A stretch of DNA of 64,000 bases, taken from positions 124,001-188,000 of the forward strand of contig NW_027270922.1 in the NCBI RefSeq assembly GCF_040938485.1, read 5' to 3'. Below are positions 38,486 to 61,310 of the stretch, in pieces. Made by a program: the position numbers and the translations under genes. The stretch's first letter is position 1. Every line of letters begins with the position of its first letter. Under the pieces are notes generated by a model. It did no database searches and was not told the DNA's origin. It saw nothing but the letters and a program-made list of their open reading frames with translations. The stretch comes from Diadema antillarum. Taxonomy: Eukaryota.

Positions 38486-38548
38486 ATGAAGGTTGATATT
38501 TTAGCATTTCATTCCCTCGTCTCTTTGATCTTATGCCGTTTCCAGAAG
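38486..38548 (+). pseudogene. Gene C signal-peptide exon with 1-bp deletion
   Basis: MKVDILAFHSLVSLILCR then CGTTTCCAGAAG|GT vs CGTTTTCCAGAAG|GT in B, changing phase 1 to phase 0. Confidence 0.75.
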
Positions 38549-39198: not shown

Positions 39199-39337
39199 GG
39201 GCCCGTTCCATAAAACTTGTCATCAGTGACAACTGCCACATTTCTATGACAGATTTGCTCTCAGCCAATCAGATGCAAGGATTTCAGTAGCTTGTCACAT
39301 CTATGACAACTTGTCACTGACGACATGAAACGGGCCC
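39199..39337. mobile_element. 139-bp MITE, GGGCCCGTT TIRs, CAG TSD
   Basis: CAG-GGGCCCGTTCCAT...ATGAAACGGGCCC-CAG in gene C intron 1. Confidence 0.8.
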
Positions 39338-40236: not shown

Positions 40237-40605
40237 TAGGAACGGACGCGCTTACAGTGACAACTTCCATTCATGGCCAAGGGGTCGTGGGGTCCGATGT
40301 GGTCATCACATGCGAATATTATCCACAGTCCAGCAGATCTGATCATGGGATACACTATAACATGCGGTGGTTTGCTCATGATACCGAGCTGGTAAGTTGC
40401 AAGTTTGATGCCGCTTCGAATAGACCGCGGTGTGACTCACAGACGGAAGATTGTTCAAAGTACTCATTTACCGCTGATGGGTACCGTTCTGGGAGTATTA
40501 TCATAAAGCGACTCACCGAAGACGATGAAAATACGTACACCTGCCTTGTAACCACCACCTCTGGCATCGGTACCAGTAGAGCAAATCTCACCGTCACACA
40601 TCCGA
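40237..40605 (+). CDS. Gene C exon: V-type Ig domain (open)
   Basis: CAGTAG acceptor, A|GTAAGT donor; ITCEY...MRWF...DENTYTC. Confidence 0.85.
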
Positions 40606-42741
40606 GTAAGTCTACCATGTTTTCTTAGGTGGTGGCTATTTTTTTTTTTTTTACGAGACCATAATCAATCAGTACGTTCAGTCTCAATATTGTCTTCAGT
40701 GATTGTATTCATTTCTCATAAACGCTTATCTTATCCTAGATAAACTGTATGATAACATTATCGTGACCCTTTTGTCCTATCTTGTTTACTCTGGTTAGCA
40801 TGGATTTTTCTGTGTCTGTCTGTATGTGTGTGTCTGTGTCATCTTGTCCCATTGTTTCACTTGTACCTCTTTCTCTTGTCTGTTCTGAATCAGAATGCCC
40901 GTTCGTTTATATAGATACATACGCACATATCCATTTTCTTTTTCTTTTCTTTTTTTTTACTCGGGGAGCTTATACAAGCTCTACCTTTTTTTTTTCTTGC
41001 AAGTTCCTTCCATATTATGTCTTACTAGGTAAAGCTATTTCAACTCATAACGATTTCATTAAGGTCTAATCACGTGAATTAAGTGTATTCATGGTTGCAT
41101 GTAGGTGCGGCTGCAGATGTATTATACTCTTGTTATCATGGTTATACTATTGTTTGTATTCTTGTACTTGCTTCATGACATTTCACCTTCTTGTACAAAT
41201 AATCTGAAAGCTAATTTGCAATCATTTTGTATTTCTTTATATGGAAATGTATAAATGAGATGAATGAAATGAAATAATAAGTCGTACCAAAGCAAACCTT
41301 TCAGTGAGACTGAACATCTCCCAAAGCAAACTGGGCCAGACAGCGGCATTGAGTTTGTATTTTGTTTTCGCAACACTTGCTGAGAATACGATTGACAGAT
41401 AAATGCAAAAATTTGCCAAATTAATCATTACAACTTCTGTCGTTTATCTTGCCTCAGAAAAAAAAAAGCTAAATGTCTTATATACTTCATTATACTTCAA
41501 GATGCTCAATCCCAACACAAGTAATCTAAGTTGTTCGCTATATACTGGTATGAGACTAAGGGCAAGTACAAATCATTTTTCACATGTGGTGACGTATCTA
41601 TAGCTACGTTAGATCTAGTATGCCGTCCTGAATTTCAAGCGCCATTGTTGAAAATCATTTCCTATCTGAAGAATGTAAAAAACGGTCTGAAAATTAATTT
41701 GTAAGATGTGTGTGCCATCATCTCACATCCGTTTTATGACAGCTCCTTAAGACTTCGCCAAAGCACGCGCTTATATGAGCGAAACATGCTTTTTGTTTGA
41801 GGTACCCATGGCACAGTTTAGGAAAATGAGTCTGGATGCTTCTGGCGGCCTGCTTGAGCCGATTAAAACCATGTCATTGAGGCACGATGGAACGATGGGA
41901 CTATATGCGGCTAATATCGTAGCGTCGGGTTCACATGGTTGTCAAGTGTCACATGATAGTGATTACTAAACAGTAGAATCACGTTATTCGTCAAGAAACG
42001 AAATGTGAGGCAAAATCAAAATGAGTCTTTAATCCTTTAAATTCGTTGCTGTGAATAGCACCTTGTATTCATTTATTCGCGAATCTGTATCTTTTTGTAA
42101 TCTGACATCAAGGACACTATACAAAGGTTGATAATCTAGAAATCGACACTTTACTAGTATCTTAGTAGTCTTTGTGAGTTTGTATTATGACCCATTCTCA
42201 AAGGTATAACCGGGGTTACTAATTAGTCCAGGGCGTACAGTTCCCTTTGTTTTATTGCATTAAGAGTACGGTCATACTTTTCCTAATTCTATTCGTCATA
42301 CACTGCGCACCACTGTCTCCAATTCACAAAGCAATGAAGATTATCGTTCCTATCATCGTATCTTATTTGACTCCGTAATGCAGCTGTCTTGCGCATTGTG
42401 CGCTTCCCTTGAAAAAAAAAATTCTATACGCAAGAAAGATGACAACTATTTTCAGAAACCTTTCGTGCATGTGCAGCCCCGAGGGTGCAGCCAACATCTC
42501 TAAGATGTTTTTGTCGTCCTCTTTGTCTTCATCCCTCTTTTTTGATACCCTTCTTTTTACCTCATCAGCACACATAGACATACTCCATGTATACTTCTAT
42601 GATAATGCATTGGCCTACATACCCTTTCCGTGTCCCACAGGGTGCACTTGACTGCCATTTACAGATTTTGTCGTTTCATTGATTGTACTATAATTTTTTT
42701 CTTCTGATTTTTGTTTTTGTTTTTGTTTTTGTTAAAAGTAG

Positions 42742-43397
42742 TAAGGTTGCCAGATACTCTGGAATTAGGGAGCTTTAGATTTTGACGCGCGGACGTTTGA
42801 GACGACGAGTGCGCTGGACGTTCTCCTCTCCCTGCGTCGTGTGGAAAAGTAGCTTTAGATAACGCTGGGACGCAACGTATAAAAAATACAATCGCGCCCC
42901 CATATGATCAGTGCATGAAGAAGCTCTCTACGTCGCAAACTGTGCGGACGTGAAAATAGCCCAGTACGCGTAGTGAAAAACTCAGGCGACGCAAGCTAAA
43001 AATAGATTGACTTTACGCGCGCTACTGCGCACGCTCAGAACATGTTTTTTTCCTTTGAACGTCCGCGCGCCTAAAATCTAAAGCTCCCTATTGACTGGTG
43101 CTGACAACCTCCAAGCTAACCTATCTCAGACGATCATGTGCACTTCTGCGGGCAGCTACCCGGCCCCGACCTTCCACTGGTACATTGATACCCGAGAAGT
43201 CACTGCTGACGCCGTAACCCTCCCACCCGAAACCCATGGGCAGGGTGGGGGTGGACGGGTCGTCAACGCAACGAGTATTCTCACTTACAGGCCTTCTCGA
43301 GGGGACCACGGTAAAAGCCTGATTTGCAAGCTGAGTCTTTCCGACTCGTCTTCCAAAGTGACTGTTGTGAATTCTTCGGTCATCCTCGAAATTCACG
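42742..43397 (+). pseudogene. Gene C C2-type Ig exon interrupted by MITE (42767-43089)
   Basis: RLPDTLE / insertion / LTGADNLQ...; removing the element and one ATT restores exactly 330 nt. Confidence 0.85.
42767..43089. mobile_element. 323-bp MITE inside the gene C C2 exon, about 31-bp TIRs, 3-bp TSD ATT
   Basis: ATT-AGGGAGCTTTAGATTTT..CGCGCGGACGTT ... AACGTCCGCGCG..AAAATCTAAAGCTCCCT-ATT. Confidence 0.9.
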
Positions 43398-43513
43398 GTG
43401 AGCCTGCAAGGCAAACATACGAATTATTCTCTCTTGTGTACTTCTGTCGTTTTTGCAGGTTTTACCTCTATATGTGTATGCAATCATAATGTCTTTACCA
43501 TCCTTTCTTGTAG

Positions 43514-43834
43514 ATCCACCATTAATATTTGACCGACAAGCCTCGACCAACTGGAACGGTGAGAGTTGCATCGCCTCCCTGTCGTGCTCGTCCGACGCCA
43601 ACCCACCAGTTAATCACTTTCGCTGGCTCAAGGTTGGAGCAGAACGCGTCTTTAACTCAAGTCGGACTCGTCACTTCATTCATACTCCCGGAGGATTGCG
43701 TGACAACGAGAGAATCGGAACACTTCTCATCGAAGACGTCCAGGGCTTCGACTACGGCTCTTATCAGTGCATAGTCTATGATGAGGAAGGAGAGAGGAAT
43801 TTGACGAGTGCAACGCTATCTCTTCTTAAACCAA
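43514..43834 (+). CDS. Gene C exon: third Ig domain
   Basis: CTTGTAG acceptor, A|GTAAGC donor, 321 nt. Confidence 0.85.
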
Positions 43835-44552
43835 GTAAGCGTAAACTGGCCGGAGGAGGGGCGTTGAAGAGGAGGGGGAGAGCAATGAGGAAAATGCTTA
43901 GCACATGCTTCTATGGATTTCCTCCTTGTGTACCAATGGTGTTGTTGCTGTATTATTCTACTTTTGTCCATGTATCTTTTCTTTTAATAATTGAAATAGT
44001 ATGTCGGAATATACATAGGCCGGTTGTATGCCTAACAATACATTCAGGTAATTGTTACCGTCAACCGAATGTTTTAACAAGTAGTTTCCAGCATAGCAAC
44101 ATCTCATGAATGAATCCAAGATTCCATGAAATGAAGTGTATAATTCAACAATTACTTGCTGCTTGGTTCTAAAAGAATTTACCATAGGTAGTCTCCTGTA
44201 ACCGTTGTCATACATTATACAAAAGAAAAGGAACTAAATGTACTGCACAGGCGTGTCGGAGATTTCGTGTTTGTCATAATGAAATGGCGATCAGACAACA
44301 GAAGGTTGATTATGCTTACCAAGTGATTTCAGGATAGTTAATGTTCCATTAATTTCCGTTAATGTTCCATAGGTGAAACATATACATGTATAATTGCCAG
44401 ATGGCTGGTGAGAGATTAAATCTGGAGCAATAAATAATCACACTCAGCAAGGATAAATCATCATAATTACGCCTTTACAGCAAACCTTTTATTTCTTTCT
44501 ACAAATCATATACGAATGCACGAAAATGTTTGATGCTTTCCCGATACGCCAG

Positions 44553-44837
44553 GCCAGTCATACCAACCAAACATCACGACCTATCCCGGCAGAGCGTCAT
44601 CATCCTCCATCTACGTTGCTTGGCAACCAAACCGCAATGACAGCATGGATGGCACAGGCAGAGTAGAATACTGCCCTGTTAATACGTCAGAGGAGGACTG
44701 CAACACCACCACCAGTGCGTCAGGTGCAAATACCACCTTGACCGGACTCCAGTCGTTCACCTGGTATCGATTGACTCTTAACTTTACAAACTGCTCTGGG
44801 ACTTTCACCACCCAACCCTTGCTGGCATCGACAGCTC
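44553..44837 (+). CDS. Gene C exon: FN3 domain
   Basis: GCCAG acceptor, C|GTAAGG donor, 285 nt open. Confidence 0.85.
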
Positions 44838-45331
44838 GTAAGGATGGTTTTCAATTTTTGTTTTCATAAATAGAGAATAATAAAGATAACTTTGTCTTAG
44901 GACTGTTTATAATCTAAATCATTTATCAATCTTCAGCACTCCATGAGTGGAGCATCGTTTGCAAATAGTTTTTACTGAACTGCTCATGCTTTCATCGGTA
45001 TTGAAGCGAAAGAATATTATATCCTTAATATACATGAGTTCTAGTCTTAGAAAATCCCCCAGAAATGACTTAGAAGGGATGACTGTGTAAAGTCACAAAA
45101 GTTTATCAAGGCCTGGATTGTTTAGATATTGAGAAAGAGATTCAGCATGATTTTATATCAAGCAGACGTACATCAATGTTGTGAGGAGATAAGGCTGTCG
45201 TCAAATATTATGTTTTTATGATTGACTGTTGGCAGTATCACTGCTTTATGGCAAGCATGCCAAAAAGGTTTTTGAAATTAATTCTTTTTTTTTGTTATTC
45301 TTATTCCATCTGCTTCATGATCATGATGAAG

Positions 45332-45352
45332 CCTTGTCACCCGCTGAATATG
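45332..45352 (+). CDS. Gene C 21-nt micro-exon (PLSPAEY)
   Basis: AAG|CCTTGTCACCCGCTGAATATG|GTAAGT; identical to B. Confidence 0.7.
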
Positions 45353-46436
45353 GTAAGTATTTTTATTGATAGTTTAAAAGCAATGTTCTTCTCTTTATAA
45401 TCCATCTCTTCTTAAAATATGTAACTAATATTTGTGCAATATGCCATCCTTAAGAACAACATACATGAACACGGTAATGTTGCTAGGAATGTATTCTTAT
45501 ATCCCTATGATTGCATGATCATCTTGTTTGCAATGTTAGTGACTGTGTAAACGAAACAAAAAAAATGGCTACCGGTCAGTTTTGCGAACTAATATGATAA
45601 ACTCGTGTATGAAAATTTGCATTATAAGACTTGCCAGTGCAACACTGATTTTATTGGCTGGCTGAATTTTATTTCTCACACTGCCAGAGAAAGGTACAGT
45701 AATGCCTGGTTGTGGCTTTCTGCTATAGGGTCTATTCTTTCTCATCTCGTGCACGGCTCCCAGCCAGGCATGTTGTCTTCTACTTTTTATTTCCCTTCGT
45801 TTCATTTTTAGTCGATGGCAACTTAGCATTATATTCTGAATAGTTATATCTTAGGCAAAGTTATTATGATGTACATGCAAATTTGTACACCTGGACCGCA
45901 TGCATAGAAGATCTGCTGCTGAATATGGGCTATCCATCCATTCTGTCAGAAACAACAACAACAACAACAACAAATCAAACACACAAACAATCGATACATA
46001 TTATTGTGTAGTCTTCCCCACACTGGTCATTCATCTATCATGTTTATGGTATATTTTTCATAAGCAGCAGCGAACATATTTTATCGTCTCACTTTTGGGA
46101 ATCTCCCCTTTCATTGTCAGACACACATCTAAAAATATCAAATCTGGATATCGTTCTCGATGGTAAGAATGACTTACAAAATCTGCAAATGTACGAACTT
46201 CTTTCGGCGCATGTGTTTCTTATCTCTTAAAGAAGAAAGATGCATAGGAACATCTCGTAACCATTTATCCAGAACAAGGCACTGACGATGTGTTTCACAG
46301 GTTTCCCTTGTGATATAGAGTATCTAACTTTAATAACCCTTCTCAAAATCCGGAAATTCTATAGCAAGAAGGAAGAGGGTCAATTCGGGTCAATTGTGGT
46401 AATCAATGGAAAATTCCTCTTTTTGCATTCTTAAAG

Positions 46437-46697
46437 GCATTCGTCTTGAGTACGACCTGACAAATGAGACTCTGACACTATCAAAATCTTGGTATAACCT
46501 CATCGTACCCGACGAGATTTCCTTCAAGCCTGTCGAGAGTTCAGATCCCGCAGACTACTGTTCGAGAAACAAGGACCAATGCGTTCCGGTTGGTTCCACT
46601 CTGCACAAAGTGGTCCCCCTGAAGAGTGGGTTTGTAGGCGTCGTCAGCTACGGTCGGCAAATTTGCAGCGTCCCGTCTTTCATTCGAGTTGAAGAAG
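46437..46697 (+). CDS. Gene C exon: domain X
   Basis: TTAAAG acceptor, G|GTCAGT donor, 261 nt; GIRLEYDLTNETL...ICSVPSFIRVEE. Confidence 0.85.
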
Positions 46698-46995
46698 GTC
46701 AGTACTTACTCATCTTGTAGAAACATCAGCACTGAAATCTCACCATGACAGTCAAAATTGACCCATATGAGACATAAGATATATTATTCCAACACTTCAG
46801 AAAACATAATAAATGTCGAGAGTGGTATTACAGAGCACATGAAAAACCAAGAGAACTGAGAACTGGTTATATCTCTGCGTGATGACTTTGATGGAATCTC
46901 CATACTGGAAAACCCCCAAGCTGGTGCTTATATGTCCCTTGTTTCACATGCTTATTTTTCACCTACTTCTAGTTGAGGGAAACCAAAGATTAAAA

Positions 46996-47004
<9 letters not shown>

Positions 47005-47042
<38 letters not shown>
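47005..47042. repeat. (TA)n microsatellite
   Basis: Direct reading. Confidence 0.95.
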
Positions 47043-47044
<2 letters not shown>

Positions 47045-48020
47045 AAACTTTATTCTTTGGCAGTAGTCATAATTACAAGTTCACGTCCATGAACTTTATA
47101 TAAACAGTCAGAGGCGTATACTTTCCGTAAAACATTATACTGTTCAGATACAAATGTTCCATCAATTTCGCTAAGAATATCTATCATGTTTGTAAGCAAC
47201 AGTTAACCTTACGGCAAGTTGTGGTCGTGAGAAAAAACATTGCGTGAAAGAAGGTGCACAACGTCTGTGTATAATATGTGAGCAGGTGTGCTTTGGAATC
47301 GGACAAGAGTGCTGGAATCTATAAATATGTTTTCGAGTGACATTATGAAGCTGAGAATATCCTTGAAACTTCAAAGAGCCTTCAAAGTACCCTGCGCTCT
47401 GTCACAATGGCTCACTTGTAACAATTATTGCCATTTCTTTTATTCTGTCTACATACAGATTTTGAAGAGGGTTGAAGGATATCTTGTGCATAATGGTTTC
47501 AGTTTCCTTTTTGCTGTTGACTAGATTGCGTTTATGGTATTCATACTGAATGAAGTTACAACTGATTAAAAAAGCCCAGCTTCCTGATAACACCATGTTT
47601 TTCACACAGATATAGGGTCTAAAAGTCATTATGATATTGCTGTTTATATCCATTTACAAAAATGTTTTTTCAAGTATTCAGGCCAGGTAATGGACGGTAA
47701 TCACCATAACTCTTTGCTGCATGTAATGCAAATTTGATATGATAATTTGACTGTTAATAATGGTGAAATCAATTATTTTGATGATATCTTCCAGCATACT
47801 TGCCATCATTATGACTATTATCATTATCATTGTTATCACTGTTACTATTATTATCGAAATACCTCGTCTTTTGTGTGTTTACTATACTCAAAATCATTAA
47901 TTAGTGCTCCTTGATCTAAATTCTTAGTGACTCATTCTTTTGTTATGCTATAATGATCTGCCCCATGATTCCAAGAAAAGGACAACTTAAAAGTTTGCAA
48001 TATGTTTTCTTTACCTGAAG

Positions 48021-48135
48021 TATCGACGGATATGGCGGCCTGGCCCATGATGACATTGACTACTGTCGTCGTTGGTCTTTCCATCGCTGTCATCGTCCTC
48101 GTCTCCGTCATCGTGGTCATGAAGACAAAACAACG
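48021..48135 (+). CDS. Gene C exon: alternative transmembrane segment
   Basis: TTACCTGAAG acceptor; VSTDMAAWPMMTLTTVVVGLSIAVIVLVSVIVVMKTKQ; donor CG|GTATTG (phase 2). Not in the ORF track. Confidence 0.8.
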
Positions 48136-48562
48136 GTATTGACTTTCGCTCACTCAATGGTCATATGCAACGACTTACAGAATCTGTGTCGCGTGAACAT
48201 GGGAATCACCTCTATATATTTGACCATTTTATTTCTTCATGTTACATCATGCTGTTGTCTGCTGTGTGATTGTCGTGCAGTAGACCTAAAGCAATTTTAG
48301 CACTTTTCAATTGTTCCCTCACTTTGTTCCTTTGCCCATGTTTAAATACTATCCGAATGCAGTTCTCTTTGTAGCGTCTCTCGAAAAAGGATATCAAAGG
48401 AAATATTCTGTTTGCCAGTTTCGGAGATTTGGAAGGAAAAAGTGCTAGTACTTCTGCGTCTGTGTCGGCTCATTTTGCATTAGCTGTGTGTCTCTACGTG
48501 CTTTTTTTGTACCTTTGAATATGTGATGTGAATACGCTTGTGCAAGCCTGTGTTACGGCATT

Positions 48563-48699
48563 NNNNNNNNNNNNNNNNNNNNNNNNNNNNNNNNNNNNNN
48601 NNNNNNNNNNNNNNNNNNNNNNNNNNNNNNNNNNNNNNNNNNNNNNNNNNNNNNNNNNNNNNNNNNNNNNNNNNNNNNNNNNNNNNNNNNNNNNNNNNN
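48563..48699. other. Assembly gap (137 N) in the intron between gene C TM and tail exons
   Basis: N run. Confidence 0.95.
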
Positions 48700-49334
48700 G
48701 TTTAATTAGTTAAAGTTTTTAGCATTCTGCAGCATTGAAATGGTCTCTCTATATGTTCACGAGTCTGTGTCTATTTGGTTCTTGTGTAGACTCGTTTGGA
48801 ACGGTCTTGTAAAAATTCTATGCTTAAGTTATGTGTATTTGCGTTTTCTGATAACGACTCCGAACCTGCGTAAATAATGGACAATTTTGTTCAATTTACT
48901 AGACATACTAAAAGCGGCCATTTTCTGATTTTTTTTTTTGTGGTGATAATATAAATTGTGATTATCAACTTTGACACTCCTAATAACACAGAGCATTTAA
49001 CTTACATGCAATGTATTATAACTAAAATAGTGTAAATCTCATGTAATGAGATGTGCTGGTTTTACTGCCTTACTAAATGAAAATGAAATCAATATCTAAC
49101 ATGCCATTGCGTTGCGCAGGAATTTTCGTCTTCAAATCTTGTTGCCTTTGTTTTCATTTCTAACGTCTTATACTTTTAATACATAGAGTGAAAACTGATC
49201 TTATGTATAGGAACTGTTTCTCTTTTTGGTAGCATTGTAGTGAATAATGGAAAATAAGATATGATTCGCATTATTGAAAAACATGAAAACAACAATTACA
49301 TGTCGAATTCGATGTGTTCATCATGTATATTCAG

Positions 49335-49761
49335 GAAACAAAACAATGGTACCGGGCCTTCCGAGAAGACGTCCGTCAATGATTCCGTAACATCACTCAA
49401 GCTCGCCGCAGTCAATACGCCCTCGAACTATGTAAGTCTCGATTCAGCGACGCGTAGTCATTCCGAATACGCATCTCTGTATGACACTGCAGCAGGACCA
49501 ACTCGGCCAGATGTTACTAGTCAAGCCCAAACCGACGTCATCAGCGACATCGTCTCGGATAACAACTATGAGACGAGGATCAGAGTGACGCCCGGTGATA
49601 AAGGTTTTGCAGTTTATGATGTTCCCGTCAACAGCCAGGTCAACGAGCGGTCGCATGAAGAAAGACCGATCGGGGATTCTGATTACGTCGACATCGTAGA
49701 TGGACGGAGAGATATTACGTTTAGAAGCATTTTAACAATAATAACCACACCAGCGCAGTAG
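49335..49761 (+). CDS. Gene C terminal exon: cytoplasmic tail with ITAM-like YVSL-x9-YASL, YDVP and SDYVDI
   Basis: ATTCAG acceptor is phase 2, matching the TM exon donor (CG+G = Arg); open to TAG 49759-49761. The junction spans an N gap in the intron. Confidence 0.75.
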
Positions 49762-50827
49762 CGACTACAATAATGATATCTGTATCACATTGGCGGCAAA
49801 CCCAGCAAATTCTGGGTTAGGCCTATCCTTCATTGTATTTAATGCACATATACGTTTATGTAATGGGCCAGGAATTTCCTGATAAATGTTATTCAGACTT
49901 GACGGAAGTGTTGTAAGGGCTTACCAATTATAGTATGTAGTTCCTTATGGTGCATTTGAAAATAAAAACAAACAAGTGAACGCAAGTCGATTCCACTGCT
50001 TTTTTTTTCACCAACTTTAGCGTGATTACACAGTGTTGTCAAGGCACAGGATTACACTCACAAAATATCGAAATAGACATCACTGATAAAAAGTAGTCAC
50101 AGAAACAAGAGTGATAAGGTAAGCTCCTGATCCTCAATGTATATCCAAAGCAATGCTTACAGTATCTCTAGAATCCACTTTAAGTCTGGACGTAAGTTGT
50201 CGATGTATTATGAGTAATCCCAATACTGCACTTTAATCGGCCATAGTCCTAAAAGGCATCGATATGGAGAATGGACAAGGACAATTGTGTTTGATATATC
50301 ATTAGCTAAACATCAAACGTGGATATTGTGAGATTAACGTAAGCAAACTATAATTAAATTTGGTGCATTGTTATCGCAGAAGTAATGATCCGTTAAGCAA
50401 GGTATTATTCACCTAAAAAGGTGTTTATATTGGATATTGTGACACTCGTGGCCTGTAAGGAGGTCTAATTATCTTGACTTCAAAATAACAGTTGGCACTT
50501 TGGCAAGACAAGGATTTATTACGTACAAATTTAAAATGTCACACCTCTGATGTACTAGTATGCAACATTGTATTTTCTCCTTAATGTAATATCTGCAAAG
50601 TATACATTGTTTGTCTTATACTCTTTTACATTCATCCGTATACACTTTTGTTCTACAGCTTGTGCATCTGTACTTCTTTGCTTATAATTTGTTTTATAAA
50701 ATGTATGCAGCGCCTTTTTTTTTTGATGGAATAAAGTAATTAAGATATCCAATCTTTGAACAATTTTTATGAAAGAAATTCATTCAAGAGCTGAATGATA
50801 TGGAATATCTTAATCGATAAAATACTA

Positions 50828-51958
50828 CAGCGGATTCCCGTTATCACGAAGTCCTCGGAACCGGCAGTTTTCTTTCGTTATATCGAAATTTCGTTATATC
50901 CGAACAAATAAACAATAAAAATACATAGAGAGGAACAAGGATGTTTGCTATCGCCGACACTCTTCAAATGTTTTCCTTGAAAGAATCATGGCAGACGCAC
51001 TTGAAGACCATCAAGGAACAGTCAGCATTGGTGTTGGTGGCAGAACAATCACAAACCTGCGTTTTCCGGATGATATAGATGGACTCGCAGGCTCGGAACA
51101 AGAACTGGAGAACCTGGTCAGGTAACTACACAGATCCTCCACAGCTTACGGCATGGAAATCAATGCAAACAAAACAAAACTGATGACAAATAATATAAAT
51201 GGAATCCAAACTGACATCACTGCCAACGGAGAAAAGCTTGAAACCGTGAAGAACTTCAAATACCTTGGAGCAATAGTTTCAGATGAGGGGTCCAAACCTG
51301 AAGTATTAGCCAGAATTGCAATGACAGCTGCAACACTTGCTAAATTGAACATCATTTGGAAGGACAAGACAATCAAGCTCATCTCAAAAATAAGACTCTT
51401 GCGTTCCCTTGTCCACTCAGTTTTTTTCTGTATGCTTGTGAAACATGGACTCTTACAGCAGAATTAGAGAAGAGGGTTCAGGCCTCAGAAATGAGATGCT
51501 TCAGAAGACTGCTTGGCATCTCTTACAAAGATCACATATGACCAATGGGGTAGTCAAAAAACAGAATAAGGCAAGCCATTGGTCCGTATGAAGATCTTCT
51601 CACCACCATCAAGAGACGCAAACTAAAATGGTTCGGCCACGTAACAAGAAGAGATGGGCTTGTCAAGACAGTACTCCAGGGAGCAGTCAGAGGAGGAAGG
51701 AAGAGAGGAAGACAGAAAAAGAGATGGGAAGACAACATCACAGAATGGACAGGACTGAAGCTGAGCGAAGCGGTCACTCATGCGAAGGACAGGGAAGGAT
51801 GGAAAGGACTGGTTGCTAGGTCATCTGTAGCGCCCCAACGGCAACCGCCATGGGGCAGGTGAGGTGAGGATAGAGAGGAAAACGTTGCGTCCATAATTTT
51901 GACTTCGTTGTAACCGGAATTTCGTTATAACCGTCTTCGTTATAACAGAAATGAACTG
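50828..51958. mobile_element. TA-flanked MITE (Tc1/mariner-pogo-like, about 190 bp net) split by a LINE insertion
   Basis: TA-CAGCGGATTCCCGTTATCACGAAG ... CTTCGTTATAACAGAAATGAACTG-TA. Confidence 0.6.
50936..51869 (+). mobile_element. 5'-truncated, frameshifted RTE-clade non-LTR retrotransposon (reverse transcriptase C-terminal fragment)
   Basis: Begins QGCLLSPTLF, continues GRTITNLRFPDDIDGLAG...INANKTKLM...FKYLG...LKWFGHV...RGRQKKRWED; GTGAGGTGAGG tail; 11-bp TSD ATAGAGAGGAA (50925-50935, 51870-51880). Confidence 0.9.
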
Positions 51959-52754
51959 TACTAGTATAAAGTTTAAGTTTCAAAGTTAATATCAACTTAC
52001 TAAGAATCTGTTGAAGTTGTGTCAGTGGTACGAGCCGATGTCTAATAAATGGAATTACTATGAATTTTGTTTTACATGTATATCTTTTAATATGGGTGGG
52101 TATGAACAAAGTACCTTTGCAGATGAAAACAAAATGAAATACAGGAAAATGGTTGCCATTTAATGTCCTACGTGGTTAAATTGGACTAAGCTTAGTTTAA
52201 TTGTCTGTTCAAATATTGTGAAAATGCTCCCTAAGATTCCTGTCTAAAATGCTTTTGGTCGTGTCAAGCTCTTACATTTCCACAATTAATAGGTGGTAAA
52301 ACATCTCTGGTGCCTGAATTCCAAAACTTCTTGAAACTACTCAACAATATAGTTCCGCATAGAAAGGAAGCCAGCTAAAAATTCAATACCCTCTTATGTT
52401 TAATTGTGCGGTCATATAAAGACTAACGAAACCTAGTTCGTGGTACTTTTAAATCAATTGATATTGGTAGTTTTGGCAATAAAAGAGTCTTCTAAGAGTC
52501 TTCTGTTTATAATGACCACTTTTATCGACAGATCCTATTCCAATGAGACATTCAACATTCCGTAATGATAACATTCAAACTTTAATTGAATAAGTGCAAC
52601 TTGTCATTGTTGTCTTGGAAGTTAACGTGCTCAGTCATGCATGACATTTTTCAACACAATTAGGTACCATTGAAAAAAAAAACAGTAGAGAACTCCTTTT
52701 CTCACAACTAACAATGCGCTACAAAGTTGGATTACCATGATTACCGTTGGTTGA

Positions 52755-52774
52755 TGCTGTTGTATTTGTTGTTG

Positions 52775-52809
<35 letters not shown>

Positions 52810-52835
52810 GTTGTTGTTGTTGATGATGATGATGA
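52755..52835. repeat. (TTG)n/(TTA)n/(ATG)n compound trinucleotide repeat
   Basis: Direct reading; source of the poly-Leu ORF. Confidence 0.9.
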
Positions 52836-53899
52836 TACGCACTGTATATGAGGTTGCTGTGTCCCTGGCTGTATCTATCACTCTATTCCCAAGGTTCCCT
52901 CTCTTCTCAGAGCTTCATTGTGTGTACTTCGAAGTTAACACAAACCGACAGAGCCTTTAGAATCGCGCCATCTGTTGACAGGTTACCAAAGAATGGAATA
53001 TGATTTTAAAATGTGTCGCAAGCTACACTAATTGAAGACCTTATAGGGAGACCTCTGGATGATTTTTCACACTTTTGCATTTGAACATCTATAAATTGGA
53101 TATACTTGGTACAGACTTTCAGAATCTAAAGTGACTGGGATGAGGAATACGAATGCTTTCAAAATTGCCATGCACACAATTCGCCATCACATTCCTTCAT
53201 TGAAATGACTTCAAATACAAGGTTGTGTACATTGCACCAAATACAATTCGGAGCATGATTACCAGGGATCAAAGGAGACCTCCGGATGATTTCAAAACTT
53301 TTACATTTGAACAAAATAGATTAATTATACTGTGTACAGAGTTTCAGAATTTATAGTGGTTGGGATGAGGAATAAGAATGTTTCAAAATCTATAACGAAT
53401 TGCAATGATCAAGGATGATGACATGGCAGCCTCGCCATAAGAATGCATGAGTTGGGGCTCAAGGAAGCAGAACAAAAGAAGAAAGCACGCATGATTATAT
53501 TCTTCCCTGATTAATTTGTTCAGCAAACGGCATTGTAATGCAATGACATTGCCACATTACTGGCATATGTGAGCTTCCTCTGTCATCATCATTGTTCAAA
53601 ATCATGTTTTGTTTTTTGTTTTTTGGAGTATTGGTTTTTCTTCCAAGGGACAACAAAAAAATCCACATATCTATACCATGGTGCCATCGATTTATTTATT
53701 ACATGATGCTGACTTTATATATTGATCGTGTGGGATTGTCCCTTTTAACATGGAGTGAGGTTGGTCACGTGCTTGAGGTTCAAAGTAATGAACAATATCT
53801 TTCTGAAAGGGAAGTTTCAATCCATGTTTAGATTTATGCTACTTTGTTGAATAGGTATAAATCAAACACACAGAGAAGTAAATGTTCCATTTTAGATGG

Positions 53900-53926
53900 A
53901 CGCACACACACAAACACACACAAACA

Positions 53927-53973
<47 letters not shown>

Positions 53974-53975
53974 AT
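53900..53975. repeat. (CA)n microsatellite
   Basis: Direct reading. Confidence 0.95.
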
Positions 53976-54529
53976 TTCGATAAGATGAAGTTAATATGAC
54001 TTCCGCGTGCTTTCATAAATAGCGCTATAGGCCAAAGCCACACATGGCAATATGGCCAATGCTGGTGACAATGTCTCGTGTATCTCTCAGTGTGCATGCA
54101 TACAATTCGCCATTTTCTTTTCCTGTGTTAAAATGACTTCAAGTCACAAGGTTGTATACATTACACCAAAATAGTTTAATACAAAAACTATAGAGCGTGA
54201 TTAGTGACCAGGGATTGAATAATGATTTGGAAGAGATGGAGTCGGTAACTTGGAGACAAAGTAATGTTTTTTTTTATCACTTTTTTTTTGCAATAGTCGA
54301 GTGGGAGAAAGCCGGTGATACTGATGCCTTGATATGTATGTAATGAAATTGCGACTGATTAGTACTATCTGAAAAAAAAGAACTTTTTCATGCTACATAT
54401 TGCTTTTATTTTGAATATGTCTCTACTTTTCTGTCGTAAAAATTTCATTCAGTTGTGGTAAAATCAAAATGCACGAAGAGAGATTCGTCTTTTCGAACAG
54501 CCCGCGACGCGTCGTGTCTTTGTGAGAAA

Positions 54530-55140
54530 AGTTTTGTCACACCTGACTTTACGGCCACCTGTCTTAAACGGACACCTGCCGCACACAGCCACTAAAAACA
54601 AATCCCCCCCCCCCCAGAGGCCATGGTAAATACCTGTATATGGTGACTACTTGTCTATTACAGCCATTTCCTGTCTCCATTGGGTGGCCGCTATATACAG
54701 GTTTTACTGTAGTATTGGTCAGTACAGACCAGGGCCGGCGGAAGTCGGGGGGGGGGGGGGAGCTCGGGCACCCTTCCACTTTTTTGCACCGTACAAAGGA
54801 ATAGGGCGTCACCACTTTGGGCTCCTCCCCCATCCCCCCCACCCCCACCCCACCCCCCCCCCCCACACACACACACTCTTTTTTATTACTGCGGAAGTGC
54901 GTAAGTGGCTTTTTGCTTGTCAACTGAAGAAACCCGGAAGTGGAAGAGAAAGATGAGCTGAAGGCGTTTATCATTTTTATTTTTATTCTCATTATTTTGC
55001 TTTTCAGCTGAAGAAACCCTGAAGTGGCACACGAAGTTGCGCTGAATGCCTTTTTTTTTCTTTTCTTTTTTTTTTGCCTGCTAGTTCATGAAACCCGGAA
55101 GTGGGCCCCTCCCCCCACTCCTCTCACTTTTGAAAACGTG
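54530..55140. mobile_element. GC/poly-G/C-rich cluster of probable transposon remnants upstream of gene D
   Basis: Contains ACAGGTTTTACTGTA (pogo/Tigger-like end), CAGGGCCGGCGGAAG plus G/C runs and three related AAGAAACCCGGAAGTGG units; absent upstream of B and C. Boundaries uncertain. Confidence 0.4.
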
Positions 55141-55685
55141 GCGCCGAGGCGACGGTGCAGACAATAAGAAGATATTAAAAAGGAAGAGCACTCAGTAGGA
55201 AGATATTAAATATGTAGAGCACTCAATAGGAAGATATTGATGTACGGAGTGAAATACAACATACCAGAGTTTATTGTCATGTCTGTAGACTGAAACAAAT
55301 ACACCTTCTTCTCATATGGCACAGACCATGATAAAAAAGCACTTGAATGCTAAGCAACAGATTATGATATCAGTCGAGTGGGCTGCGACACCTTTTCACA
55401 TGTACGACGCATGCTATCTTTCAAACCACAATATTACATTGGTTGTGCTGTGGAATAGGCCTACACTATAAAGATGTAGTGTTTGCATTGCCTACAAATG
55501 CAGCATAAGTGAATTCGGAAAAATTTCATTGCGAACAAAATAGTTCATCGAGAGCAGGAAGTGGTCGCTGCCAAGAGGCAAGTGTTAAAGGCAACTATAC
55601 AGCGCAGTCTTAGTATGCTTTGCTTTACTTGAGACCACACAGTATTATGCAGACTGAGGGGATGAGGCATCGCGGAACTATCATT

Positions 55686-55749
55686 ATGAAGACCAGTACC
55701 TTGGCATTCCATTTGATCGTCTCCTTGATCTTACCCTGCATCTCGGAAG
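55686..55749 (+). CDS. Gene D signal-peptide exon (MKTSTLAFHLIVSLILPCISE)
   Basis: 64 nt, G|GTAAAC donor; homologous to 18825-18888. Confidence 0.8.
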
Positions 55750-58700
55750 GTAAACGTCGTAGTAACTGCCGATTATCTATACACTAACGACATGTTTGAT
55801 ACCTATTTCAAAAGATATTTTCTCCTATAATTCCATTGATCCGTCTTTTCATTTGTTGTGGGGGATGACACGTGTTGACGTTTAGTCATAACCACTTGCA
55901 TTCCAGCAATATGTAGGCCTATAATTTGTTCCACCGAAGAATGCCCATTCTCATCTGAATGATAACAATGCATATTATGACATATGGAAAATCGTTAAAG
56001 GGTAAATTGCAAATTAAGATAACTTATCCATTGAATGTTTTGAAAAAGATATTAAAAAGTCTGGTCGATCATCTACTTATCACTAGTCGTAATGAAACAA
56101 AATACAATAGGAATTTCATTTCTGCTGGAAGTAAAGTAAATTCATATCTCTTGACTATTTTATGTCCATAGGAAAGATCTAACTGCACTTATACCTGATA
56201 TACCAGACTATATAATAACAGGTGTATACTGTCAGAAAGCTTCATACTATTTTATGCTTCATAACTGTCCTCCTTTTTTTCTAACAGTATCGGAGCGCAG
56301 AGATTTTGGTACTGTTAAGTACTAAACCTTCAACATTTAATGTCTTACAAAAGAAAACCTTAAAAAGATAGGAAACAGGAAAACAACTGTAAGATCTCCT
56401 GGGACAAGGAAAGTATAATGATGATGATGACGGTGGAGGATTATGTAAAAAATAGAGCTCGTTAATATTGACGGGTTCATTGCCATGATAGTCAACAGTT
56501 TTTTTCTCCTGCATTCTTACCAACATAACTACGTATAAAAAATGTTTTGCATTACATTCAATCCAGCTTGTATTTTATCACTTATTTTACATTATGAAAT
56601 CCAGATTGCTTGCGTCCACGATGGCACATGCTGTAGTTCCCTCTTTTTTCTCCCTTTTTTTTCCTCTCTTTTTTTCCTCTTCTTTTTCCTTTCCTTTTCT
56701 CTCTTTTTCCTCTTCCCAATCATTTTGATGTCAGTTGACATCGGTTCGTTTATTGTGTTTTATATTGATGTTTTGTGTATTTTTCTGAGGGTCCCATATC
56801 GTACAAGCTTTGCTTCTTAGTGGGACCCTCCACTTCCATCCTCATCCTTAGTTGACTTGTATTATACGCTTTATGTATTTAACAAAGATGTAATCACATC
56901 TACTTTTCACTTTCATAATTTTCTTATGTACCTTTTCAAGTTTTGTTCTGTATCACAAATATCCCGTGTATACGCAATGTACATAAAGTTCTTTGTTCAT
57001 TTTGATGGAGGTGAAAATAAAGTTGAAAGTTGAAAGTTGAAACACCAAGTTCGTTTATATTTTTGTTGTTGTTGTTGTCTTCAGAAAGGAGTGAATTTAC
57101 AGTGTCTACTTCCGTTCAAGGCCAAAGAATCGAGGGGTTCGAAGTGGTCATAACTTGCACGTATCATCCTCGCTCCATCCCAGAGAAGTTCTCTAGCCTG
57201 CAGTGGTTTGTTGATGGCAGCAAGTTGGGGAGTTGCAGGCGTAATGACGGTTCCAACGAAATACGGTGTAGCCCAAAGATGGGGTACAGTTCCAAGTACT
57301 TCTTCACAGCTGATGGCGTATGTTGTGGGAACATTACCATACATCGACTCACCAAAGACGATGAAAAGACATACAGCTGCCAGGTAGGCACCGAGGATGG
57401 AATCGGACTGAGTGACGCTCGTCTCACCATTATACATCCCCGTATGTTCACCTTTACTTTATTACGATGCAATGGCTACTTTTTCCAAAACAATGTAAAA
57501 GCGCTATTATGTGAATACATGATTAGTATAATCACTGGCGTATTCAGGGAAGTGGGAGAGNNNNNNNNNNNNNNNNNNNNNNNNNNNNNNNNNNNNNNNN
57601 NNNNNNNNNNNNNNNNNNNNNNNNNNNNNNNNNNNNNNNNNNNNNNNNNNNNNNNNNNNNNNNNNNNNNNNNNNNNNNNNNNNNNNNNNNNNNNNNNNNN
57701 NNNNNNNNNNNNNNNNNGCCTACATTCACATGCATGTGACAATTATACATTTTTCTTTTTATTGATGTACCCCGAATTCAACTTTTAGAGTTACATTTGT
57801 ATCAATTGCTTGTATCCATGTTGTTTTGTGATGACTTTTATACTTGTATGGTTATGAAATATCTTTTTTATGCCAATGTAACATTTTGTATGATGAAATG
57901 TGCATCTGTGCATTTGGTCACCAGTCAAATTTTTTAATAAAGACCTTTTCAATCAATGTACGTAACGCACATATATGATTTTTGTGGACTATAATTATGT
58001 ACATGTATTTCCAGTATGTACAAGTATATCAGTTACATAATTATAAAGATGTACAGTGTGGATAATACTGTGAACACACATTATCATGCCTGCGTATGTT
58101 ATTAGCTCAGCCAGAGTTCTCGAAGACAGATGAAATCAATTCCTTGCATCCATGTATAATGTGCATGTCTATGTATGTGTATATAGACACATAATAGGCC
58201 TACATACATTATAATCTTATACATATTACATTATTTCCTATCCCGCTCAAGAAGTAGTTTACAGGCCTGCTGCAAGTTTTTATTGTACATTTTGCCTATT
58301 ATACCTGCTGTTTTTGTTTTTTATGATCTTTCCTTTAAAATGAGAAGGGCTTCCGTATACACATGAGTTGACTGGTACTGACAACCTCCAAGTTAACCTA
58401 GCTCGGAACATCTCGTGCACTTCTGCGGGCAGCTACCCTGCCCCGACCTTCCGCTGGTACATTGATACCCGAGAAGTCACTGGTGACGCCGTAAGCCTCC
58501 TACCCGAGACCGATCGTGCCGATGGGCAGGGTGGACGTGGAGAGGTCGTCAACGCAACGAGTATTCTCACTTACAGGCCTTCTCGAGAGGACCACGGGAG
58601 AACCCTGGTGTGTAGCCTGAGTCTTTCCGTCTCGCCTTCAAACATGACTGTTTTCAATTCTTCGGTCATCCTCGACATCCAATGTGAGTTTCAAGGCATT

Positions 58701-61275: not shown

Positions 61276-61310
<35 letters not shown>

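What the first reader, a model, noticed from the sequence alone, without database searches (positions are those of the whole stretch)
48021..49761. Gene C swaps to a different TM exon and a single-exon tail with ITAM-like and adaptor-binding motifs
Homology to A and B fades through the intron after domain X. The TM exon is only distantly similar (VIVLVSVIVVMKT vs VILVLVFGVMMT) and ends in phase 2, matching a 427-nt terminal exon. The tail has NYVSL-DSATRSHSE-YASL (49429-49479; ITAM consensus spacer 6-8, here 9), YDVP (49615; Crk/Nck SH2-type motif as in p130Cas) and SDYVDI. There is no charged TM residue, so signalling would be intrinsic. Caveat: SNYVSL, SEYASL and SDYVDI also fit the loose ITIM consensus, so the activating role is inferred, not shown.
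Basis: partly seen in the sequence, partly recalled or inferred. Interest (0 to 1): 0.8.

Follow-up and report, generated by a model that had tools for sequence, protein, structure and literature searches.

The report
Sea-urchin receptor with swapped signalling tail
One of four neighbouring sea-urchin surface-receptor genes has swapped its membrane anchor and inner tail for a cassette from an unrelated, uncharacterised Diadema gene family. The cassette's tyrosine docking motifs are conserved, so the gene probably signals differently from its inhibitory-looking neighbours, but neither its transcript nor the direction of the signal has been shown.

Summary
The TM exon (48021-48135, phase 1 in, phase 2 out) and the 427-nt terminal exon (49335-49761) read as described, with all the motifs in place.

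- **Where the swap happened.** Gene C follows genes A and B through the domain-X exon and about 960 bp of the next intron, to about 47660. After that all similarity stops. No A/B-type TM or tail exon remains near C.
- **Where the cassette comes from.** A search of 1.8 billion proteins found one real relative. It is an uncharacterised Diadema protein cluster (XP_071511658, XP_071509492, XP_072176800) made of a signal peptide, a roughly 25-aa ectodomain, a TM segment and the tail. The TM/tail exon boundary splits the same Arg codon (CG|G).
- **What is conserved.** Five of C's six tail tyrosines are conserved, including YxxL-D-x8-YxSL with an unchanged 9-residue spacer in three paralogs. The YETR, YxVP and C-terminal Y[VI][DE][IV] motifs are also kept.
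- **The gap.** It lies inside the intron. Its two flanks match consecutive exons of one gap-free Diadema gene, so a mis-join is unlikely.
- **Not shown.** Splicing of the cassette to the C ectodomain is unconfirmed, because no RNA run was listed. The activating role is unconfirmed, because the motifs also fit ITIM. Gene C also has a damaged Ig2 acceptor.

The scan noted this cluster before only on this same window.

The parts
46437..46697 (+). Domain-X exon of gene C. It is the last exon shared with genes A and B, and its donor G|GTCAGT is phase 1.
   Evidence: 88% nt identity to A 8999-9270 and B 28689-28960. No Pfam family matched.
46698..47658 (+). The part of the intron that is still homologous to the A/B intron.
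   Evidence: The last blastn block, 47490-47658, matches A 10156-10319 and B 29848-29966 at about 71%. In the alignment the similarity ends near 47660.
47659..48020 (+). Start of the segment with no A/B counterpart. It contains the recombination breakpoint and the TM-exon acceptor (tgttttctttacctgaag|).
   Evidence: No credible signal-peptide first exon with a usable phase-1 donor was found between 44870 and 48020.
48021..48135 (+). TM exon, 115 nt, phase 1 in and phase 2 out. It encodes a short stalk, a 25-aa uncharged TM segment and the KTKQ(R) stop-transfer.
   Evidence: It is homologous to the Diadema P0005 TM exon (score 83). The Arg codon is split CG|G in both.
48136..49334 (+). Intron between the TM and tail exons. 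It contains the N run at 48563-48699.
   Evidence: The Diadema counterpart intron is 963 bp with no N.
49335..49761 (+). Terminal exon, 427 nt. It encodes a 141-aa cytoplasmic tail and ends with TAG at 49759-61.
   Evidence: phmmer matched Diadema XP_071509492 at E = 4.6e-11. BLASTP gave 39% identity over 112 aa.
49429..49479 (+). The YVSL-DSATRSHSE-YASL pair, an ITAM-like motif with a 9-residue spacer. Both sites also fit the ITIM consensus.
   Evidence: The spacing and the pattern YxxLD..R..S[ED]YxSL are conserved in P0005, P0004 and a second Diadema paralog.
49567..49578 (+). YETR motif. It is conserved as D[HN]xYE[TS], which is repeated four times in the Diadema homolog.
49615..49626 (+). 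YDVP, a YxxP site of the Crk/Nck/Abl SH2 type.
   Evidence: It aligns with YSVP in P0005.
49684..49695 (+). YVDI, the C-terminal hydrophobic pTyr site (SDYVDI, which fits the ITIM consensus).
   Evidence: It aligns with STYIEV at the C-terminus of P0005 and with STYIDV in P0004.
49961..49966 (+). First AATAAA after the stop codon, a candidate polyadenylation signal about 200 nt downstream.
   Evidence: This is a pattern match only.
43084..43116 (+). Damaged 5' end of gene C's Ig2 exon. A 13-bp deletion relative to A/B/D leaves the homologous AG out of frame. The next in-frame phase-1 acceptor gives an exon start at 43116.

Best explanation
Gene C is a chimeric receptor gene.

**How it arose (inferred).** Its five ectodomain exons (V-set, C2-set, Ig, FN3-like, domain X) belong to the tandem A/B/C/D IgSF family. 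A recombination in the intron after domain X, between about 47660 and 48020, placed them in front of a two-exon TM-plus-tail cassette from a different gene family. In Diadema that family also occurs as a stand-alone small membrane protein. It probably also occurs behind a CUB-domain exon.

**What it would encode.** Spliced X to TM to tail, the gene gives a type-I receptor with an uncharged TM segment and a 141-aa disordered tail.

**How it would work (inferred).** The tail would act as a phosphotyrosine docking module.
- After phosphorylation by a Src-type kinase, the conserved YxxL-x9-YxxL pair would recruit a tandem-SH2 protein. My first choice is a Syk/Shark-type kinase, at roughly 0.35 overall. 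A SHP-type phosphatase is about 0.2.
- The conserved YxVP and C-terminal Y[VI][DE][IV] sites would recruit Crk/Nck-type and Src/SHP-type SH2 proteins.
- Either way, C's output would differ from that of A and B, whose tails carry canonical ITIM (LIYVAV, LVYFSV) and ITSM (TIYSAV) sites.

**Shown versus inferred.**
- Shown: the exon anatomy, the homology breakpoint, the membership of the cassette in the Diadema tail family, and the conservation of the motifs.
- Inferred: splicing to the ectodomain, phosphorylation, the binding partners and the sign of the signal.
For: **The swap**
- Four paralogs share the ectodomain exons, but the C tail has no match elsewhere in the window.
- C versus A/B: the X exon is 88% identical, intron homology runs to 47658, and nothing follows.
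- No A/B-type TM or tail remnant lies anywhere in C or downstream as far as gene D.

**Origin of the cassette**
- The only true phmmer hit among 1.84 billion representatives is the Diadema cluster P0001/P0004/P0005.
- The TM/tail exon boundary and the split Arg codon are the same.
- Five of C's six tail tyrosines are conserved, against 33-39% overall identity.
- A second Diadema paralog keeps DYMALDATTRTSSDYMSL with the same spacing.

**Fusion rather than a separate gene**
- The TM exon has an acceptor with a polypyrimidine tract, and it reads the TM frame only from a phase-1 donor. That is the phase of the X exon and of all the domain exons.
- The donor-derived DNA begins 363 bp or less upstream of the TM exon. 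The Diadema stand-alone gene needs 4 kb and two extra exons there.
- No credible leader exon was found.
- In D. antillarum, a CUB exon, a phase-1 TM exon and a tail exon of this family splice in frame. The cassette may therefore be used behind other ectodomains too.
- No stand-alone protein of 78-247 aa carrying this tail is in the 5.8-billion-cluster collection.

**The ectodomain is still constrained**
- There are no stops in 503 codons.
- dN/dS against A and B is 0.52, at dS 0.23-0.24.

**Motifs are non-random**
- Shuffle frequencies are 0.7% and 0.36%.
- The pair fits the Yxx[I/L]x(6-9)Yxx[L/I] ITAM definition used for the Hydractinia Alr tails (PMC9546547).
- Syk and HTK16 (Shark-like) transcripts exist in an echinoderm (PMC11593052).
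Against: - No transcript evidence exists. No RNA run was listed, so the 46697/48021 junction is unverified.
- The nearest relative of the cassette is a stand-alone gene with its own signal peptide (P0005). The TM exon also has in-frame ATGs at 48002 and 48032. A separate small gene is therefore possible.
- Gene C's Ig2 acceptor is disrupted, and Ig2 dN/dS for C is about 0.7-1.2. The full five-domain receptor may not be made.
- The spacer is 9 residues, outside the canonical 6-8.
- SNYVSL, SEYASL and SDYVDI all fit the ITIM consensus.
- The first tyrosine has no acidic residue upstream.
- The N run in the cassette intron could not be bridged with reads.
Confidence: 0.5

Rival explanations
1. 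There are two genes, not one. The TM and tail exons belong to a separate small transmembrane adaptor-like gene, a paralog of Diadema XP_071511658, that happens to lie downstream of a 3'-truncated gene C. Gene C would then be secreted or dead. Translation of the small gene would start from an undetected upstream exon, or from the ATG at 48002 or 48032.
For: - P0005 is a stand-alone protein with a signal peptide, a short Cys-bearing ectodomain, a TM segment and the tail.
- The 217-aa P0001 and P0004 models start at a Met in the TM exon.
- There are in-frame ATGs just before and inside C's TM exon.
- Read-through of the X-exon donor stops after 7 codons, which would give a secreted form.
Against: - No leader exon or micro-exon homolog was found in the window.
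- Only 363 bp of non-A/B DNA lies upstream of the TM exon.
- The TM exon has a normal acceptor and a phase-1 entry that matches the X exon. The stand-alone Diadema gene enters its TM exon in phase 0.
- No small protein with this tail is on record.
Confidence: 0.22
2. Gene C is a decaying or non-functional chimera. The recombination and the Ig2 acceptor deletion left a gene that makes no working receptor, and the open frames simply reflect how recent the events are.
For: - A 13-bp deletion puts the homologous Ig2 acceptor out of frame.
- Ig2 dN/dS for C pairs is 0.74-1.21.
- No expression evidence exists.
- No annotated protein was found.
Against: - About 640 codons across seven exons carry no stop or frameshift, at dS of about 0.23 from A/B. 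Ectodomain dN/dS is 0.52 overall.
- All five conserved tyrosine motifs of the cassette are intact, although the tail is only 33-44% identical to its paralogs.
- All the domain exons are phase 1-1, so skipping or trimming Ig2 keeps the frame.
Confidence: 0.15
3. C is a fused receptor, but the tail is a second kind of inhibitory tail. The ITIM-consensus sites recruit SHP or SHIP phosphatases, so C is not the activating partner of A and B.
For: - Three sites fit [S/I/V/L]xYxx[I/V/L].
- SEY[AV]SL and S[TD]Y[IV][ED][IV] are conserved in the Diadema homologs.
- SEYASL resembles the vertebrate Siglec LHYASL ITIM (from my own knowledge).
Against: - The two conserved tyrosines are 13 residues apart. 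That is close to ITAM spacing (10-12) and far from the roughly 20-30 residues used by tandem SH2 domains of SHP phosphatases. The A/B tails have that wider spacing (the spacing rule is from my own knowledge).
- The -2 position of the first site is not conserved (G in P0005).
- The conserved YxVP and YETR sites are not ITIM features.
Confidence: 0.2

Closest known systems
Diadema 'uncharacterized protein' cluster XP_071511658.1 and XP_071509492.1 (D. antillarum) and XP_072176800.1 (D. setosum)
   Same: - The TM segment and MKTK[QR]R juxtamembrane stretch are homologous.
- The TM/tail exon boundary falls in the same split Arg codon.
- The YxxLD-x8-YxSL pair, D[HN]xYE[TS], YxVPV and the C-terminal Y[IV][DE][IV] motif are shared.
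   Different: - Identity is only 33-44%.
- The Diadema proteins have a signal peptide and a roughly 25-aa ectodomain instead of five IgSF/FN3/X domains.
- They enter the TM exon in phase 0, after a 26-nt micro-exon.
- They carry an internal triplication of the YE[TS] segment.
- C has an extra 19-aa C-terminal extension.
CEACAM1/CEACAM3-type paired receptors (mammals and Xenopus; PMC5112662, PMC2110893)
   Same: - They are clustered IgSF paralogs with near-identical ectodomains.
- One partner has an ITIM/ITSM tail. The other has an intrinsic ITAM or ITAM-like tail and no charged TM residue.
- The tails are encoded by separate exons, and the ectodomains evolve together.
   Different: - This is a vertebrate family unrelated in sequence.
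- The CEACAM3 motif is YxxL-x7-YxxM, and its activating role has been shown experimentally.
- Here the spacer is 9 residues and nothing has been tested.
Human FcgammaRIIA (intrinsic ITAM, 12-residue spacer) versus FcgammaRIIB (ITIM); from my own knowledge
   Same: - The activating partner carries its own non-canonical ITAM in a tail with an uncharged TM segment.
- The pair differs mainly in the TM and cytoplasmic exons.
- Unequal crossover has made chimeras in the cluster (FCGR2C).
   Different: - The ectodomain architecture differs.
- Syk binding has been shown for FcgammaRIIA.
- There is no sequence relationship.
Hydractinia Alr IgSF family (PMC9546547)
   Same: It is an invertebrate tandem IgSF family (V-set plus an Fn3-like fold). 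The tails are far more diverse than the ectodomains, and some carry an ITAM (Yxx[I/L]x(6-9)Yxx[L/I]) or an ITIM.
   Different: - It is a cnidarian family with no sequence homology shown.
- A cassette exchange with a breakpoint mappable in one intron is not described there.
Vertebrate transmembrane adaptor proteins (the LAT/SIT/LAX type, and DAP12/FcR-gamma/CD3-zeta); from my own knowledge
   Same: The stand-alone Diadema relative has the same plan: a tiny ectodomain with one Cys, one TM segment and a multi-tyrosine tail with a dual YxxL.
   Different: - The TM segment has no acidic residue, unlike DAP12, FcR-gamma and CD3-zeta.
- There is no CxxC palmitoylation motif or YxN sites, unlike LAT.
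- There is no sequence similarity.

Membership tests
Diadema XP_071511658-type TM+tail family | Homologous TM segment with a MKTK[QR]R stop-transfer | tested here: met
   18 of 30 residues identical and local score 83, against 39 for the A/B TM exon.
Diadema XP_071511658-type TM+tail family | TM/tail exon boundary in phase 2, splitting an Arg codon as CG|G | tested here: met
   Window: caacg|gtattg ... cag|gaaac. L002: cgtcg|gtagga ... cag|gaaac. Paralog 2: CGTCG|GTAAGA.
Diadema XP_071511658-type TM+tail family | Significant similarity along the tail, with conserved tyrosine motifs | tested here: met
   phmmer E = 4.6e-11 across the whole library. BLASTP E = 3e-16 and 9e-07. Five of six tyrosines aligned.
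Canonical ITAM | Two Yxx[L/I] sites | tested here: met
   YVSL and YASL. Both are conserved in three paralogs.
Canonical ITAM | Spacer of 6-8 residues between the two Yxx[L/I] sites | tested here: not met
   The spacer is 9 residues. This meets only the wider 6-9 definition (PMC9546547) or the 6-12 definition.
Canonical ITAM | Acidic residue(s) shortly upstream of the tyrosines | tested here: inconclusive
   The second tyrosine has E at -1 (SEY). The first (PSNY) has none in C, whereas Diadema paralog 2 has SDY at both sites.
Canonical ITAM | The doubly phosphorylated motif binds the tandem SH2 domains of a Syk/ZAP-70/Shark kinase | not testable with these tools
   This needs biochemistry. Syk and HTK16 transcripts are reported in an echinoderm egg transcriptome (PMC11593052).
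ITIM | [S/I/V/L]xYxx[I/V/L] | tested here: met
   SNYVSL, SEYASL and SDYVDI. The -2 position of the first site is not conserved (GTYMGL in P0005).
ITIM | Recruits SHP-1, SHP-2 or SHIP and inhibits signalling | not testable with these tools
Paired (activating/inhibitory) immune-type receptors | Closely related ectodomains encoded in one gene cluster | tested here: met
   Four tandem paralogs. C versus A/B: dN 0.12 and dS 0.23-0.24 over 503 codons.
Paired (activating/inhibitory) immune-type receptors | One partner has ITIM/ITSM and the other has an unrelated tail | tested here: met
   A/B carry LIYVAV, TIYSAV and LVYFSV. The C tail is unrelated to them.
Paired (activating/inhibitory) immune-type receptors | The activating partner has a charged TM residue and a short tail, and signals through an ITAM adaptor | tested here: not met
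   The TM segment MMTLTTVVVGLSIAVIVLVSVIVVM has no charged residue, and the tail is 141 aa. It resembles the FcgammaRIIA/CEACAM3 subtype instead.
Paired (activating/inhibitory) immune-type receptors | Opposite signalling outputs, and expression on immune cells | not testable with these tools
   No RNA run was listed.

The most novel reading that the evidence does not exclude
An echinoderm has built an activating counterpart to ITIM/ITSM receptors by moving the TM-plus-tail cassette of a small adaptor-like membrane protein behind an IgSF ectodomain. The cassette carries an intrinsic, lineage-specific ITAM variant (YxxL-D-x8-YxSL) that recruits Syk or Shark. The same cassette serves as a stand-alone adaptor, as a CUB-receptor tail and as an IgSF-receptor tail. 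This would be a modular activating system that arose independently of the vertebrate one.
Probability: 0.2. Interest if true: 0.75.

Novelty: new variant of a known kind. Interest (0 to 1): 0.5.

Why it matters
Vertebrate immune-receptor clusters such as KIR, LILR, SIRP, CEACAM and FcgammaRII contain paired receptors with one ectodomain plan and opposing tails. How far back this logic goes, and how new partners arise, is an open question in comparative immunology.

This locus offers a clean case. The breakpoint maps to a window of about 360 bp in one intron. The donor cassette belongs to an identifiable gene family, and its tyrosine motifs are conserved.

If the transcript and the SH2 partners are confirmed, two things follow.
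- It would be an echinoderm example of tail-cassette shuffling that creates signalling diversity.
- It would define a new conserved tyrosine motif to test against Syk and SHP.

If the cassette proves to be a separate gene, it still defines an undescribed family of adaptor-like membrane proteins in Diadema.

Tried and rejected
- **RNA evidence.** The look-up of sequencing runs on the tail exon listed no run, so read laying could not be used. Neither the junctions nor the gap were tested with reads.
- **Word-index protein searches.** The tail as query (targets of 78-247 aa only) found nothing. P0005 as query found only its own cluster. Full-length receptors of about 700 aa could not be reached, because no stop-free reference longer than 218 aa exists and spliced sequences were not typed in.
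- **Pfam.** The tail and domain X had no hits.
- **ESM Atlas by features.** The best hit was an unnamed 133-aa cluster at 0.90 with low recognition. I treated it as uninformative.
- **phmmer hits P0002 and P0003.** These are repetitive proteins that match through low-complexity stretches. I rejected them as relatives.
- **A stand-alone leader exon.**
  - tblastn with P0005 residues 1-35 found nothing in the window.
  - A scan for ATG plus a hydrophobic stretch plus a phase-1 donor between 44870 and 48020 gave only candidates in intron sequence shared with A/B/D, or in a microsatellite.
- **Gene C's own signal-peptide exon.** The block conserved between the B, C and D upstream regions (36950-37390) has stops in every frame and looks like an interspersed repeat.
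- **C's TM exon as a diverged A/B TM exon.** I rejected this. The nucleotide match over the 40-nt core is 65%, which is expected for V/I/L codons. The exit phase differs (1 in A/B, 2 in C) and the Diadema exon is much closer.
- **Gene D's tail.** By intron landmarks, D's X exon would start at about 63925, so its X, TM and tail exons lie beyond the window.
Full report
**What the window is.** It is an AT-rich animal genome, 34-44% GC. It carries four tandem paralogs of a single-pass IgSF receptor.
- Gene A runs from 719 to about 12920.
- Gene B runs from 20116 to about 32726.
- Gene C runs from 40257 to 49761.
- Gene D starts at 57102 and runs off the end of the window.

The exons encode five ectodomain units.

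| Exon | Pfam result |
|---|---|
| V-set | PF07686 |
| CD80-like C2-set | PF08205 |
| Ig | Ig_3 |
| FN3-like | weak PF25059 |
| Domain X | no family matched |

All of these exons are phase 1-1. By sequence, the nearest solved structures are only generic IgSF proteins: SYG-2/nephrin, RAGE and myelin P0.

Earlier notes of this scan call the genome Diadema, and one names D. antillarum. My own support for that is indirect. The only database relatives of the tail are Diadema proteins. Interspersed repeats in the window are 80-91% identical to D. antillarum and D. setosum loci.

- The TM exon runs from 48021 (after tgttttctttacctgaag) to 48135 (CG|GTATTG).
- Read with one carried base, it gives V-STDMAAWP, a 25-residue uncharged hydrophobic segment, and KTKQ.
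- The terminal exon starts after the AG at 49333-34. Its first base completes the Arg codon, and the frame stays open for 141 codons to the TAG at 49759-61. The other frames are closed.
- X, TM and tail splice into one open reading frame.

In 100,000 composition-preserving shuffles, a Yxx[LI]-x6-9-Yxx[LI] pair arises in 0.7% and three or more ITIM-consensus sites in 0.36%.

**The gap.** The N run at 48563-48699 lies within the intron between the two cassette exons, so reading frame is not at issue. The question is whether the two sides belong together.
- Both sides carry exons homologous to consecutive exons of one Diadema gene, in the same order and orientation, and with the same split codon.
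- That gene's intron is 963 bp in a locus with no N. Here the intron is 1199 bp, counting the N run.

A mis-join of unrelated DNA is therefore unlikely. It could not be excluded with reads, because no run was listed.

**Where the swap happens.**
- C matches A and B at 88% in the X exon, and in blocks through the following intron as far as 47490-47658. After that nothing matches.
- The whole roughly 20-kb duplication unit, including the intergenic DNA, is shared between A-to-B and B-to-C at 78-92%. C's unit stops at about 47660. The 9.4 kb from there to gene D is unrelated and contains a reverse-transcriptase fragment.
- No remnant of the A/B TM exon or of the two ITIM/ITSM tail exons lies in or after C.
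- C's TM exon is not a diverged A/B exon. It leaves in phase 2, whereas A/B leave in phase 1. It aligns with the A/B exon at score 39, but with the Diadema exon at score 83.

**What the cassette is.** phmmer of the tail against 1.84 billion representative proteins gave one real relative, P0001, at E = 4.6e-11. The other two hits are repetitive proteins. P0001 clusters with P0004 and P0005, and all three are 'uncharacterized protein' entries of D. antillarum and D. setosum.

P0005 (268 aa) has a signal peptide, a roughly 25-aa ectodomain with one Cys, the TM segment and the tail. It is encoded by four exons of 79, 26, 137 and 565 nt.

These features are conserved between C and this family:
- TVVVGL...MKTK[QR]RK in the TM and juxtamembrane stretch.
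- SLK...A...Y[VM]xLD[SA]xxRxxS[ED]Y[AVM]SL, with an identical 9-residue spacer.
- AQT...D..D[HN]xYE[TS].
- YxVPVxSQ.
- A near-C-terminal S[DT]Y[VI][DE][IV].

Five of C's six tail tyrosines align with tyrosines, although overall identity is only 33-39%. By my own binomial arithmetic this has a probability of about 0.03. It is suggestive rather than conclusive.

A second paralog lies 4 kb upstream in the Diadema loci and keeps DYMALDATTRTSSDYMSL. Its phase-1 TM exon and its tail exon splice in frame to a CUB-domain exon. That model is not among the called genes, so it is my inference.

**One gene or two?** This is the main uncertainty.

In favour of a fused gene:
- The TM exon has an acceptor, and it reads the TM frame only from a phase-1 donor. 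That is what the X exon provides.
- The foreign DNA starts 363 bp or less upstream of the TM exon. This leaves no room for the leader exon, the micro-exon and the 4 kb of introns of the stand-alone gene.
- No leader homolog or credible signal-peptide exon is present.
- No small protein with this tail is on record.

Against a fused gene:
- No transcript was available.
- The nearest relative is a stand-alone gene.
- In-frame ATGs lie at 48002 and 48032.

I put the fusion at roughly 0.6, a separate gene at about 0.22 and a dead chimera at about 0.15.

C's Ig2 exon has a 13-bp deletion at its 5' end compared with A, B and D.
- With the conserved V-exon donor (CCGA|GTAAGT), the homologous AG gives an exon start at 43084 and the reading T-P-Y-stop.
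- The next in-frame acceptor gives an exon start at 43116, which removes about 16 residues.
- Because every domain exon is phase 1-1, trimming or skipping Ig2 keeps the frame.
- The other exons are intact and constrained. There are no stops in 503 codons, and dN/dS against A and B is 0.52. Ig2 alone runs at 0.74-1.21 for pairs involving C.

**How it probably works.** The topology is type I: a stalk outside, an uncharged TM segment and a KTKQRK stop-transfer inside. The tail has no domain and looks like a disordered multi-tyrosine docking region.

The two conserved tyrosines are 13 residues apart. That is one more than the canonical ITAM maximum, it is within the 6-9 spacer definition used for Hydractinia Alr tails (PMC9546547), and it is much closer than the spacing of the A/B ITIM and ITSM sites. 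Echinoderms express Syk and a Shark-like kinase (PMC11593052).

My preferred reading has three steps:
1. A Src-family kinase phosphorylates the tail.
2. A Syk/Shark-type tandem-SH2 kinase is recruited to the pair.
3. Crk/Nck-type and Src/SHP-type SH2 proteins dock at YDVP and YVDI.

All three YxxL/I sites also fit the ITIM consensus, so an inhibitory or mixed output stays open. The sequence does establish that C's tail is unrelated to the ITIM/ITSM tails of A and B, and that its tyrosine sites are under conservation.

**Comparison with what is known.** The arrangement works like vertebrate paired receptors of the FcgammaRIIA/IIB or CEACAM3/CEACAM1 subtype. Those have an intrinsic motif and no charged TM residue (PMC5112662, PMC2110893). 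It also parallels invertebrate IgSF families whose tails are more diverse than their ectodomains (PMC9546547). It is not a member of any of those families by sequence.

It fails the strict ITAM spacing test, and it fails the feature of a charged TM residue plus a separate adaptor. It is a member of the uncharacterised Diadema TM-plus-tail family.

I rate it a new variant of a known kind. It is of moderate interest because the breakpoint and the donor family can be identified, and it is limited by the lack of transcript and binding evidence.

Noticed in passing
window 43030-43130 (compare 3170-3270, 23610-23710 and 58300-58410): Gene C's Ig2 (C2-set) exon has a 13-bp deletion at its acceptor. 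The homologous AG (exon start 43084) is out of frame and reads T-P-Y-stop. The next in-frame phase-1 acceptor gives an exon start at 43116. Ig2 dN/dS for pairs involving C is 0.74-1.21, against 0.27-0.70 in the other exons.
   Followed up: partly
window 10799-10942 / 30619-30762, 12201-12329 / 32016-32144, and 12714-12917 / 32523-32726: The TM exon and both ITIM/ITSM tail exons of genes A and B are 100% identical as protein, while their ectodomain exons differ (dS 0.18). This suggests recent homogenisation of the 3' halves.
   Followed up: partly
window 13191-20120 versus 33000-40260, and 49800-57100: The intergenic DNA A-to-B and B-to-C is homologous at 78-92%, so the tandem unit is about 20 kb. 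The C-to-D intergenic DNA shares only a repeat of about 430 bp with them (36958-37382 / 17377-17807 / 53271-53698), which has stops in all frames.
   Followed up: partly
L002 1272-1634, 4817-4913 and 5802-6078 (also L001 about 3515-3763 and L003 about 3914-4186): In D. antillarum and D. setosum, a second tail paralog (DYMALDATTRTSSDYMSL) lies 4 kb upstream of the P0005 gene. In L002 its TM and tail exons splice in frame to a CUB-domain exon (PF00431, E = 3e-9). The model is not in the called-gene table.
   Followed up: partly
window 48125-48138 and 49338-49351: A 14-nt direct repeat, ACAAAACAA[C/T]GGTA, sits at the end of the TM exon (spanning its donor) and again at the start of the tail exon. 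It may be chance or a trace of microhomology.
   Followed up: no
window 51153-51541 (+ strand): These ORFs resemble the C-terminal part of a non-LTR retrotransposon reverse transcriptase. They lie in the non-homologous segment downstream of the cassette. The call is by eye and no family search was run.
   Followed up: no
window 46437-46697 (also 9008-9268 and 28698-28958): The membrane-proximal 'domain X' exon matches no Pfam family. It is the most conserved exon between A and B (dN 0.02).
   Followed up: no
window 60942-64000: Intron landmarks shared by genes C and D (45271-45367 with 62822-62922, and 45685-45741 with 63182-63240) put D's X exon at about 63925. D's X, TM and tail exons therefore lie just beyond the window.
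   Followed up: no
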